Shown here: one piece after another, positions 21,201 to 24,200 of the stretch
Layout of the letters: each line of letters begins with the position of its first letter
Position numbering within the stretch: position 1 is the stretch's first letter
Source: Phallusia mammillata
Lineage: Eukaryota
NCBI GenBank assembly: GCA_965637545.1
Contig: OZ281497.1
Span: 6,014,001-6,078,000, forward strand
DNA: 64,000 nucleotides
Direction: 5' to 3'
The notes under the pieces: generated by a model
What the model saw: only the letters and a program-made list of their open reading frames with translations
The model's database searches: none
Told to the model about the DNA's origin: nothing
Position numbers and translations under genes: made by a program

Positions 21201-24200
21201 AACATTAATTGTAACCAAGAGAAACAATGAAGTCAAGGATCAAAGTAAAAGACAATATGAACTGCACTGACTGGGCAGTGTCGCCGCGCGTAAAATTAAA
21301 GAAAAAACAATGCCATCCCTGATGACTCTGTTGACAGGGCGATTCTGGTGGACCTCTGAGCTGTCTGTTTGATGAAACAACCTGGTATCAAGTGGGCGTG
21401 ACTTCATATGGAAGCGGGTGTGCTCTTATCGGTTCTCCTGGTGTTTACACAAGAGTTTCTTCCTTTTCTTCTTGGATCACGAACAGTATGTTTCTCGTAT
21501 TAGTTTTCTATTTGCTATTTAATGCACATAATAGGAAGTTATTTGTGTTTTTGTGATTTATTGGGCTTACTTTTCCTACATGGTATAGGTGTTTTAAAGA
21601 GGAATAACATTCAAAATAATTTCCGTTGTGATGTAGATGTCAATGCGACGTTACCCCCATCGCCCACTGCAAGTTCTTCTTTAGTTTCACCTCCTCAAAG
21701 TTCCACCGCACTTATATCCACAAGTAACTCTACAGTCACAACTACGACAAGTTCTACTACAGTCCCATCTGCACAAAACTCCACTACAGTCCCATATACC
21801 ATGGATGCTTCTGCAGTCCCATCTACTACAGGTTCCTCTACAGTCCCATCTACTACAGGTTCCTCTACAGTCCCATCTACTACAGGTTCCTCTACAATCC
21901 CACCACCAGGTACATGCAAAAAACACAGAATAGTTAACATAAGACAAACATAGGTATTGCTTGAACTACGCTTGAAACTGAATGAATGTTTTTTGTATCA
22001 ACTAATAAACATTGTGTTTAAGAATGTGAGTCTCAAAATTACACGTCATCGTCTGGAGTTATTACGTCACCCGGATACCCTGGAGACTATGATAACAACA
22101 TGCATTGCGAATACTTTATTTCTGCTTTGCCACACTTGGTAAGTGGAAGTAAAAACAATTTTTGAAGTATATTTCAACATTGTCGAAAACAATTGCATTT
22201 AACAGTTAAAAATAAACAGTCTAAAACATCTTTTATCGACCGAGCCTTCATCCCTCTAAGGGTGCCAGGAGTGTAGGCGCTTGCCATAGTTACACCAGTC
22301 CTTCGATCACAGCAGAAAATAAATCCAAACTTGCATACCTTGGAATTATCAAAAACACGTTCTTGGCCATTATTGTGTTAAATAAGGCATCGTGCTTTGT
22401 GACAAAGACCATGATTTTTAATTTCACAAATTTACCATCTACGTTTTTGAAAGACTTACAATCGCTGGTCTAAAAATTTTACATGTGCAATTGCTTTGTA
22501 TTCAGGTGTTAGAAATTTCTTTTGATCATTTTGACATAGAAGAACACTCAGCTTGTATTTATGACTACTTAGAAGTTTACGATGGAGCAGAACTGGTGAG
22601 TAACTCTTGAAGTATGACACTCATACAGTTTTTACAATTCAACGAAAAGTGTGTTTGCCAAAAACGCGTGCATATATCTAGAATACTGTTTCGACAACTT
22701 TTGGTTGTCAAAAATTAAATTGAAAAACAATTATTTTGTGCAGTACACTGGAACACGGTTGTGTGGTAACCAAGTACCACGCAACTTTGCGGCGTTTTCT
22801 ACGACAGTGCGTATTGTTTTCCATACGGACCCCATCATAGTTCGAAGTGGATTTGCAATATCATGGAATACAACGGGTAGGGTTTTTATTTCTCACAATC
22901 TGTTCCTAATCAGCATCTTGTTTAAGCTACACTCCTCTTGCAGGTCCGTGGAAAATCTTTTTCGTTTTTGGATAGAGTTAGAGATAGCAAACTCCCATGA
23001 ACCAATTATAAATTCATGTGGTTTGAATTATCTCTGTTTTCTTTGTTGCAGTGCGTTGCAGTAGTGATAATGAATTTACGTGTTGGGATGGAAGTTGCAT
23101 AGCTGAGATCCAACATTGTAATGAAGTAAGCGATTGTCCACATGGGGAAGATGAGATTGAATGTGGTAAGTAAAATAAACCTGGAAAATACAAACAAAGG
23201 CTGCCCATATGAACGTTTTTAAAGTAAAATATACCCAATCATGGATTAGCATTTTTATGTTTGCTGATAATGTCAGGGACCATGAAATACTGCAGAGTAC
23301 AATTAAATTTTTTTTGCAAACTAGATCAATTAAAACCTAGTTTCTTCTCAAGTATGTTTAGCACTGGTTGACCATAATTACATATACCCCCTATTTATTT
23401 TTGAGGTTATGTTATACGCTTAGGTAAAATAAAATTCGTTATCTTTTCAGTGCAAGGGGTGGGATCAACTGGTCATTGTGGAACTGTTGATGTAGCACCA
23501 AGTTTTGCATGGGTATGAAACTCACATGTACTTTGGGTTTTATAATTTTTGTGTTAGTATTTAAACAATGAATTGGTTTACAAGTTTCAGCATAGAAATT
23601 TTGTCTCATACCGTATGATCAGCCAAGTCGCTAGAGTCGACAAATATAATCTATAGTTGATCATCAACAATAGTTGGGCTATGGTATCACAATTACAAAC
23701 TTACAGTGGTTGAGATTTTCTTTAGAATCCTCGTGTAGTCGGTGGAAGTCCTGCAGAACCTGGTTCCTACCCGTGGATGGCTATGCTCACTGATGAACAG
23801 GGCCAGTTTTTCTGTGGTGGAACAATAATCACTGACAACACCATTCTTACAGCGGCTCACTGTGTGGATGGGGATACTTATGGGTAAGCTATATTATTTA
23901 TGTGGGTACCCTGCGGTCAAAAATATGCTGAAACTATAATTAGTGTTCGGTAAAGTGTCCTTTTTGTTGTTGCACAGCATCACCTTTAATCAAACGTTAT
24001 AACTGTACTTGACAACAACTGTATTTGAATTACCTTTTATGGTAGCAGATAAGAAGATAGTTGTCAAAACTGTCTTTGGGTCATTGTTTTATTTTGCCCA
24101 AGTCGCTTGCTTCTAGATGTTTTTGTACAAAAACAGTTCTTAGTTGACTTACACGTCATTAATATCGGTTTGTCATTTTTGTGACCTCACTCTTTCTTCA

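What the first reader, a model, noticed from the sequence alone, without database searches (positions are those of the whole stretch)
21637..21960. Chimeric exon: a duplication breakpoint inside coding sequence removed the anchor and extended the chain
Seen: the exon starts as the terminal mucin exon (same start as 25991; three VPSTTG repeats). At about 21895 it switches to CCACCACCAG|gta, the 3' end, donor and downstream intron of the linker exon 17290-17364. The fusion is in frame, bypasses the GPI exon and leads into a second CUB-LDLa-protease module. This is a directly readable mechanism for adding a protease domain.
Basis: seen in the sequence. Interest (0 to 1): 0.7.

Follow-up and report, generated by a model that had tools for sequence, protein, structure and literature searches.

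The report
In-frame hybrid exon from module duplication
A 4.5-kb stretch inside an animal (probably sea-squirt) gene for a membrane-anchored multi-protease was duplicated in tandem with both breakpoints inside coding exons, leaving one in-frame hybrid exon that strings an extra CUB-LDLa-protease unit onto the chain: a clean example of a known way in which multi-domain proteins grow.

Summary
Window 17349-21892 and 21894-26234 are tandem copies (89-95% identical).

- **Hybrid exon.** The single junction lies in exon 21637-21909. Its 5' part matches the Ser/Thr-rich stalk exon 25991-26461. Its last ~10 nt, the donor and the downstream intron match linker exon 17290-17364. The exchange window (21894-21902, ACA ATC CCA) has the same codon phase in both parents, so the fusion is in frame.
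- **Gene model.** My 24-exon model has GT-AG sites only and is open for 1,115 codons: linker, CUB-LDLa-protease A, hybrid exon, CUB-LDLa-protease B, stalk, GPI-signal exon.
- **Both copies look functional.** Both keep the catalytic triad, the activation site and identical exon lengths. dN/dS between them is 0.19, and each lineage shows constraint on its own. A and B are sister copies (100/100 support).
- **Context.** The other full terminal modules found nearby stand singly.

The anchor was not removed. The GPI exon lay outside the duplicated segment and still ends the gene. The family already carried several protease domains per gene, as polyserases and ovochymases do.

No transcript, read or population data could be reached, so splicing of the hybrid exon and fixation of the duplication are inferred. 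Verdict: real, tidy and ordinary in kind.

The parts
17290..17364 (+). Linker exon (phase 1-1, Ser/Thr/Pro-rich, ends CCACCACCAG|gt). Its 3' end is the right-hand parent of the hybrid exon.
   Evidence: In frame with the upstream CUB exons.
17349..21892 (+). Duplication unit A: tail of the linker exon, CUB-LDLa-protease module A, and the 5' part of the stalk exon.
   Evidence: Self-BLAST.
17476..18351 (+). Module A CUB domain, three exons: 17476-17591, 17981-18070, 18219-18351.
   Evidence: Pfam PF00431 hits together cover profile positions 1-109. Exon table.
18519..18979 (+). Module A LDLa exon (18519-18632) and activation-peptide exon (18918-18979). The latter carries a Cys 15 residues upstream of the R|VVGG cleavage site.
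   Evidence: PF00057 hit. The small exon was found by its conservation in gene 2.
19193..21485 (+). Module A trypsin-like protease, five exons: 19193-19350, 19968-20060, 20247-20404, 20956-21104, 21338-21485. Motifs present: TAAHC, DIALL, DTCQGDSGGP.
   Evidence: PF00089 hits cover profile 1-220, except that the short exon 19968-20060 was not scanned. Translations.
21637..21909 (+). Hybrid exon (273 nt, phase 1-1, 90 full codons). The 5' part is stalk exon with three VPSTTGSS units; the last ~10 nt and the donor come from the linker exon.
21894..21902 (+). Breakpoint window (ACA ATC CCA). This is imperfect microhomology with both parents in the same codon phase. CCA at 21900-21902 is shared by all three sequences.
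   Evidence: Read directly.
21894..26234 (+). Duplication unit B.
   Evidence: Self-BLAST.
22023..25840 (+). Module B: CUB exons 22023-22138, 22506-22595, 22744-22876; LDLa 23052-23165; activation exon 23451-23512; protease exons 23726-23883, 24380-24472, 24665-24822, 25302-25450, 25693-25840. Every exon has the same length as its partner in module A.
25991..26461 (+). Full-length Ser/Thr-rich stalk ('mucin') exon with ~10 copies of the 27-nt repeat. Stands in for the left-hand parent of the hybrid exon.
26687..26775 (+). Single terminal exon: small residues (GNSA), a polar spacer, the hydrophobic tail [18 protein letters not shown], then the stop. Reads as a GPI-attachment signal.
   Evidence: It is the only copy in the window. 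The GPI reading rests on sequence features alone; no predictor was run.
18486..19344 (+). An 859-bp tract identical to 23019-23877, spanning two exons, two whole introns and most of a third exon. Background intron divergence is 6.9%. Most likely a recent gene-conversion tract between the two modules.

Best explanation
A gene for a mosaic, C-terminally anchored poly-serine-protease underwent an intragenic tandem duplication of about 4.5 kb.

**The event (shown).** One breakpoint fell in the Ser/Thr/Pro-rich linker exon that precedes the last CUB domain. The other fell in the repeat region of the Ser/Thr-rich stalk exon that follows the last protease domain. The ends were joined at a short imperfect microhomology (ACA-xTx-CCA) that has the same codon phase in both exons. 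The result is one hybrid phase-1/phase-1 exon: a stalk-type acceptor and body, with the linker-type last codons, donor and intron.

**The product (inferred).** This exon now serves as a ~90-residue, probably O-glycosylated spacer between protease A and a second CUB-LDLa-protease module B. The intact stalk exon and the single GPI-signal exon follow module B. The predicted product therefore keeps its anchor and gains one complete zymogen module. That module has a CUB and an LDLa domain and an Arg-Val activation site. It has a pro-peptide Cys placed to stay disulfide-linked to the catalytic domain, and a trypsin-like Asp189 pocket.

**What rests on what.** Shown: the duplication, the junction, the open frame, intact motifs and purifying selection on both copies. 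Inferred: that the hybrid exon is spliced constitutively to 22023, GPI anchoring, the disulfide tether, and the joining mechanism (microhomology-mediated joining or replication slippage).
For: - **Duplication and junction:** tandem collinear units and a single junction. The junction is unique in the assembly.
- **Gene model:** GT-AG at every exon and a 1,115-codon open chain across the junction. CUB, LDLa and trypsin domains are confirmed exon by exon.
- **Inherited splice signals:** the hybrid exon's acceptor matches that of 25991 over the 15 intron bases upstream. Its donor differs from that of 17364 at intron positions +4 and +8 only.
- **Selection between copies:** exons differ by 3.0% and introns by 6.9%. 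All 10 exon pairs have equal length, while 8 of 11 intron pairs differ in length. dS is 0.085, dN 0.016, dN/dS 0.19.
- **Selection on each copy:** polarised with five paralogues, lineage A has 10 nonsynonymous and 9 synonymous changes (p = 0.014 against neutrality). Lineage B has 2 and 11 (p = 3.5e-6).
- **Module B needs upstream exons:** only a 113-nt intron separates it from the hybrid exon, which leaves no room for its own promoter or signal-peptide exon.
- **Timing:** A and B form a 100/100 clade, 4.6% apart, against 17-22% to every paralogue.
- **Ancestral state:** gene 2 in the window and the paralogues at C4 6.09, 6.10 and 6.20 Mb show one terminal module followed by a stalk exon. Gene 2 also shows the GPI-like tail.
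Against: - No cDNA, RNA-seq, read-depth or population data could be reached. Use of the 21909-to-22023 junction is therefore unverified.
- All module borders are phase 1, so in-frame isoforms that skip a module are possible.
- The selection tests rest on only 37 differences.
- Four of the changes assigned to lineage A lie in a loop that varies among the paralogues used as outgroups. Their polarity is uncertain.
- If this species is as polymorphic as some sea squirts, 3-7% divergence alone would not exclude two alleles.
Confidence: 0.68

Rival explanations
1. The duplication is real and both modules are used, but as alternatives. Every module border is a phase-1 intron, so splicing 17364 to 22023 (skipping A) or 21485 to 25991 (skipping the hybrid exon and B) would each give an ancestral-type single terminal module with the full stalk and anchor. 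On this reading the hybrid exon is rarely or never included.
For: Phase compatibility of all these junctions. Both modules are under constraint, which this model also predicts. The two modules differ in a loop that varies among paralogues, as alternative modules with different specificity might.
Against: Skipping 10-11 consecutive exons with good splice sites over 4.5 kb is not the default outcome. The hybrid exon keeps intact, inherited splice sites and an open frame. Its non-repeat 5' part differs from 25991-26069 at only 1 of ~79 bases, below the intron divergence.
Confidence: 0.17
2. Assembly artefact: two diverged haplotypes of one module were laid down in tandem, so the hybrid exon does not exist in the animal.
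For: The copies differ by 3-7%, which is within reach of allelic divergence in very polymorphic marine invertebrates. An 859-bp identical tract could also arise from identity by descent. No read data were available.
Against: The junction joins non-homologous points (stalk repeat to linker tail) over at most 9 nt of imperfect similarity, which is no overlap an assembler would use. There is no gap or N. It lies inside a 31-Mb contig. The join is in frame and reconstitutes a working exon. Substitution patterns are asymmetric between the copies, 10N/9S against 2N/11S (Fisher p = 0.06). The stalk parts differ by an 11-codon indel and in repeat number. The family shows other module duplications.
Confidence: 0.08
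3. The duplication is real, but one copy is an untranslated passenger on its way to decay. Alternatively, the transcript ends after the hybrid exon: read-through of the donor meets a stop at 21951, and an AATAAA lies near 22001. That would give an anchor-less product carrying module A only.
For: Read-through of the donor would add 13 residues and then stop (ORF 21504-21950). An AATAAA lies in the 113-nt intron.
Against: The same AATAAA lies in the parental intron 17365-17475, which must be spliced out for the ancestral gene to work. Module B shows the stronger constraint (2N/11S, p = 3.5e-6). It has no frameshift in 1,221 nt of exons, although the introns carry many indels.
Confidence: 0.07

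Closest known systems
Polyserases: human polyserase-1 (TMPRSS9), polyserase-2 and polyserase-3 (PMC1435904)
   Same: Two or three S1 serine-protease domains in tandem in one translation product. One domain may be catalytically dead. Polyserase-1 is membrane-bound. Proteins annotated polyserase-2-like or TMPRSS9-like are among the best library matches to a protease exon of this gene.
   Different: Here each terminal protease has its own CUB-LDLa stem, the modules are separated by Ser/Thr-rich stalks, and the tether is a predicted C-terminal GPI signal rather than an N-terminal anchor. Identity to those proteins is only 37-49% over one exon. Orthology was not tested.
Ovochymase / oviductin polyproteases, including ascidian HrOvochymase (PMC9265791)
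   Same: Protease domains interleaved with CUB domains in one chain, including a protease-like domain without a full triad. HrOvochymase is signal peptide, protease, 2 CUB, protease, 3 CUB, then a triad-less protease. An OVCH2 protein is among the library hits.
   Different: Ovochymases as described have no LDLa domains, no Ser/Thr stalk and no GPI signal. The domain order differs. No orthology was shown.
Matriptase-type TTSP stem with a prostasin/testisin-type anchor (from general knowledge of these families)
   Same: A CUB-LDLa stem directly upstream of an Arg-Val activation site, with a pro-peptide Cys. A C-terminal hydrophobic signal, as in GPI-anchored S1 proteases.
   Different: TTSPs are type II membrane proteins with an N-terminal anchor and one protease domain, apart from TMPRSS9. 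Whether this gene's N-terminus fits was not examined here.
In-frame intragenic tandem duplications that double a catalytic domain or create chimeric coding sequence. Examples: somatic kinase-domain duplications of EGFR and BRAF (from memory), and chimeric genes from tandem duplications in Drosophila (PMC4503668; abstract only seen).
   Same: A head-to-tail duplication inside one gene, with a single novel junction and the reading frame preserved. The result is a longer chain with a second catalytic domain.
   Different: In the kinase examples, as I recall them, the breakpoints are intronic, so whole exons are reused. Here both breakpoints are exonic and a new hybrid exon results. Here the event is germline, old (dS about 0.085) and under purifying selection.

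Membership tests
S1A (chymotrypsin-fold) serine protease, Pfam PF00089 | Profile match over the whole domain | tested here: met
   Four of the five module-A protease exons match PF00089 positions 1-46, 86-129, 134-177 and 178-220 (E 1.5e-15 to 1.7e-5). Module B is 92-100% identical at protein level.
S1A (chymotrypsin-fold) serine protease, Pfam PF00089 | Catalytic His57, Asp102 and Ser195 in their motifs, and an Arg/Lys-Ile/Val activation site | tested here: met
   TAAHC, DIALL, GDSGGP and NPR|VVGG are present in both modules. Asp at the S1 position (DTCQGDSGGP) is present in both.
Polyserase / polyprotease (several S1 domains in one chain) | Two or more protease domains encoded in one continuous reading frame of one gene | tested here: met
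   Genomic level only. Exons 17290-26775 splice into one open frame that holds two protease domains. Upstream exons of the same strand and chain add one more protease and one triad-less domain.
Polyserase / polyprotease (several S1 domains in one chain) | A single mRNA and translation product containing them | not testable with these tools
   No transcript or protein record of this species was reachable.
Ovochymase | Secreted chain of protease and CUB domains only; orthology to OVCH or HrOvochymase | tested here: not met
   LDLa exons (PF00057), a Ser/Thr stalk and a C-terminal hydrophobic signal are present here. These are not part of the described ovochymase architecture (PMC9265791). Orthology itself was not tested.
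GPI-anchored protein | C-terminal signal: small omega-site residues, a polar spacer and a hydrophobic tail ending the protein | tested here: inconclusive
   GNSA, then DMNRSRT, then [18 protein letters not shown] and the stop. Gene 2 has an analogous tail. No GPI predictor or experiment was available.
Intragenic tandem duplication with exonic breakpoints | Two adjacent collinear copies, and a single junction that joins a distal point to a proximal point of the ancestral gene | tested here: met
   Units 17349-21892 and 21894-26234. The three-way alignment places the switch at 21894-21902. The sequence 3' of the breakpoint in the stalk exon, and the GPI exon, are each present once.
Intragenic tandem duplication with exonic breakpoints | The copies are each other's closest relatives, and the single-copy state is seen in relatives | tested here: met
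   The A+B clade has 100/100 support. Distances are 4.6% between A and B against 17-22% to paralogues. The other full terminal modules traced at C4 6.06-6.23 Mb each stand singly.

The most novel reading that the evidence does not exclude
The hybrid exon may be one snapshot of an unusually plastic gene family. The family is a roughly 300-kb cluster of anchored poly-proteases, probably in a tunicate. On this reading, module number is reshuffled paralogue by paralogue through intragenic duplication. Copies are partly homogenised by gene conversion. A surface loop of the protease domain (SWPV, SGSL, IGFL, SSSV...) diversifies between copies. This pattern would fit a recognition or gamete-interaction role in which adding differently tuned protease modules to one tether is itself the selected trait.
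Probability: 0.15. Interest if true: 0.55.

Novelty: new member of a known kind. Interest (0 to 1): 0.3.

Why it matters
This is a fully readable natural example of how a catalytic module is added to a mosaic extracellular protein when the duplication breakpoints fall in exons rather than introns. Two low-complexity Ser/Thr/Pro exons in the same codon phase supplied a tolerant, in-frame joining point. The hybrid exon inherited one parent's acceptor and the other's donor. Both copies then stayed under purifying selection.

This supports two points. Flexible linker exons are permissive sites for domain accretion. Polyserase-type architectures can grow one module at a time by simple tandem duplication.

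It does not reveal a new mechanism or a new protein class. Its value is as a documented case and as an annotation aid, since gene predictors may split or truncate such a gene.

Tried and rejected
- **Protein search with the hybrid-exon ORF (21504-21950).** 8,000 candidates were scored and none passed. The repeat words probably swamped the candidate list, and an exact copy is evidently not on record.
- **Exact look-up of that ORF from its first ATG in public assemblies.** Nothing on record.
- **Exhaustive profile search with protease exon 20248-20403.** The best matches were multi-protease proteins of vertebrates, a sea urchin and a nematode at 32-54% identity. No protein of this species or a close relative appeared, so there was no annotated gene model to compare with.
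- **Spliced (joined) protein.** Exons were searched one by one by reference. Joining was done only inside local scripts, to check the frame and to count substitutions. Full-length homology search and structure prediction of the two-module product were therefore left out.
- **A second anchor exon.** I considered and rejected the idea that a second GPI exon or an internal promoter or signal exon sits between the modules. The gap is a 113-nt intron copied from 17365-17475.
- **Another in-frame case at C4:6217933-6221057.** This partial extra copy lies after a complete module and its stalk exon, lacks the His-bearing exon, and shows no in-frame fusion.
- **Species.** Not determined. Earlier notes of this scan call it a sea squirt. 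A weak GH6-domain hit in the genome (26.7 bits, 29.9 with neighbours) fits that but does not prove it.

Full report

Yes. A self-comparison of the window shows two collinear tandem units, 17349-21892 and 21894-26234. They match in four blocks at 89.0, 95.2, 88.8 and 91.8% identity.

The exon that starts at 21637 has the same acceptor context and the same first ~80 nt as the exon that starts at 25991. It contains a 27-nt repeat, 6.5 copies against 9.8 in the downstream exon, with three exact VPSTTGSS units. It ends CCACCACCAG|gt at 21909, as linker exon 17290-17364 does. The next 113 nt copy intron 17365-17475, with 3 mismatches in 111 aligned bases, and lead to a CUB exon at 22023.

Reading the three sequences side by side locates the junction. 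The hybrid exon is unambiguously stalk-type up to 21893 and unambiguously linker-type from 21903. The nine bases between (ACA ATC CCA) match the repeat at 8/9 and the linker at 7/9. At least one substitution has occurred there since the event, because the A at 21897 is linker-like and the C at 21899 is stalk-like. Both parents read this stretch in the same codon phase (T-V-P and T-M-P), so the join is in frame wherever the exchange fell.

**2. Gene model.**

I defined 24 exons from 17290 to 26775. One of them is a 62-nt activation-peptide exon that was found only through its conservation in the neighbouring paralogue. All sites are GT-AG. The spliced chain is open for 1,115 codons and has one terminal stop.

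- **Domains.** Exon-by-exon Pfam scans confirm CUB (three exons, profile 1-109), LDLa, and trypsin (profile 1-220, less one short exon not scanned).
- **Order.** Linker, CUB-LDLa-protease A, hybrid exon, CUB-LDLa-protease B, full stalk exon (25991-26461), then a terminal exon (26687-26775).
- **Terminal exon.** It encodes GNSA, a polar spacer and a hydrophobic tail. This reads as a GPI-attachment signal, but no predictor was run.
- **Upstream.** The linker exon is in frame with two further CUB domains. Further upstream on the same strand lie CUB-LDLa-protease (6834-8465) and an LDLa plus a protease-like domain that lacks the TAAHC His motif (10034-11850).

The spliced product was never sent to a search or fold tool.

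**3. Are both copies alive?**

- All ten exon pairs have equal lengths, whereas 8 of 11 intron pairs differ in length.
- Exons differ at 3.0% of sites (37 of 1,221) and introns at 6.9%.
- dS is 0.085, dN 0.016 and dN/dS 0.19.
- Five paralogous terminal modules served as outgroups. With them, lineage A carries 10 nonsynonymous and 9 synonymous changes, and lineage B carries 2 and 11.
- Against a neutral nonsynonymous fraction of 0.776, these give p = 0.014 for A and p = 3.5e-6 for B.

Four of the changes assigned to A lie in a loop (SWPV against SGSL) that varies among the paralogues themselves. Their polarity is uncertain, and A may be more constrained than the count suggests.

Catalytic His, Asp and Ser, the S1 Asp, the NPR|VVGG activation site and the pro-peptide Cys are intact in both modules. 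Module B is separated from the hybrid exon by only 113 nt. It has no room for its own promoter or signal exon, so its strong constraint implies that it is translated by splicing from upstream exons.

**4. When and where did the duplication happen?**

A and B are 4.6% apart in protease exons 2-5, against 17-22% to every paralogue. They form a clade with 100/100 support.

Gene 2 in the window has a single terminal module at 54106-56992, followed by a Ser/Thr/Pro stalk exon and a GPI-like tail exon. The full terminal modules at C4 6.09, 6.10 and 6.20 Mb also stand singly and are followed by a stalk exon. This is the ancestral arrangement. The hybrid junction occurs once in the 240-Mb assembly.

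**5.

- **Right:** the mechanism (a tandem-duplication breakpoint inside coding sequence, an in-frame hybrid exon, a second module).
- **Wrong in wording:** 'removed the anchor' and 'bypasses the GPI exon'. There is one GPI exon only. It lay outside the duplicated segment and still ends the protein.
- **Missing context:** the gene was already a polyprotease before the event.

**6. Rivals.**

(a) *Alternative module use.* Every module border is phase 1, so isoforms that skip A, or that skip the hybrid exon plus B, would be in frame. They would restore the ancestral architecture. Only cDNA can exclude this. I give it 0.17.

(b) *Haplotypes assembled in tandem.* Divergence alone cannot exclude this in a very polymorphic invertebrate. 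But the junction joins non-homologous points across at most 9 nt of imperfect similarity, without a gap, inside a 31-Mb contig. It also reconstitutes a functional, in-frame exon. I give it 0.08.

(c) *One copy dead, or the transcript ends after the hybrid exon.* The constraint on module B speaks against this. So does the presence of the same AATAAA in the parental intron. I give it 0.07.

**7. Comparison with what is known.**

Chains with several S1 protease domains are established:
- human polyserases 1-3 (PMC1435904);
- Xenopus ovochymase (cited in PMC1435904);
- ascidian HrOvochymase, which is protease, 2 CUB, protease, 3 CUB, then a triad-less protease (PMC9265791).

The best library matches to one protease exon are annotated TMPRSS9-like, polyserase-2-like and OVCH2. 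They share only 32-54% identity.

This gene works like a polyserase. Per module it has a matriptase-like CUB-LDLa stem, and at the C-terminus a prostasin-like signal. It is not shown to be an orthologue of any named gene, and it fails the ovochymase architecture because it has LDLa domains, a stalk and an anchor signal.

Growth of repeat proteins by intragenic tandem duplication is textbook. The unusual detail here is that both breakpoints are exonic and still gave a working exon.

**8. Limits.**

No transcript, read-depth or population data could be reached. The species was not determined. Earlier notes of this scan call it a sea squirt, and a weak GH6-domain hit is consistent with that.

**9. 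Verdict.**

The event is a neat, well-preserved instance of a known process. Interest 0.3.

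Noticed in passing
window 18486-19344 and 23019-23877: An 859-bp tract is perfectly identical between the two modules, against 6.9% background intron divergence. It spans the LDLa exon, the activation exon, two whole introns and most of the first protease exon. Most likely recent gene conversion; a local assembly or polishing collapse is the alternative.
   Followed up: partly
window 38181-43058 and 43196-46986 (gene 2): The neighbouring paralogue has its own, different internal tandem duplication of its first LDLa-protease module (proteases at 39038-41006 and 43992-45927). Gene 1 has only one such module, at 6834-8465. Module number therefore changes independently in each paralogue. 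I did not examine that junction.
   Followed up: partly
window 10034-11850 and 48262-49893: A protease-like domain has SASC where the active-site TAAHC motif should be, so the catalytic His motif is lost. It is conserved in both genes, which suggests a retained pseudo-protease domain, as in polyserases and HrOvochymase.
   Followed up: no
window 31396-31500: A lone LDLa-like open stretch, 89% identical in protein to the module LDLa exon, lies between gene 1 and gene 2. No other module exon was detected next to it. It may be a relic of another partial duplication.
   Followed up: no
G000:C4:6217933-6221057 (minus strand; loci L009 and L014): A partial extra copy of a terminal protease module (exons 2-5 only, no His-bearing exon) lies downstream of a complete module and its stalk exon. 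Parts of it are 93-96% identical to the full copy. This looks like a duplication that did not give an in-frame extension.
   Followed up: partly
window 21030-21050 and 25376-25396 (protease exon 4): A short loop differs between modules A and B (SWPV against SGSL) and varies among all the paralogues (SWPL, IGFL, SSSV, LGYL, NGAL), while the flanks are nearly invariant. It is a candidate specificity-determining loop.
   Followed up: partly
window 25841-25990: The intron between the last protease exon and the stalk exon of module B is 150 nt long and has no in-frame stop (ORF 25681-26466). Retention of this intron would stay in frame. The module A counterpart is 151 nt and would shift the frame. 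Probably chance.
   Followed up: no
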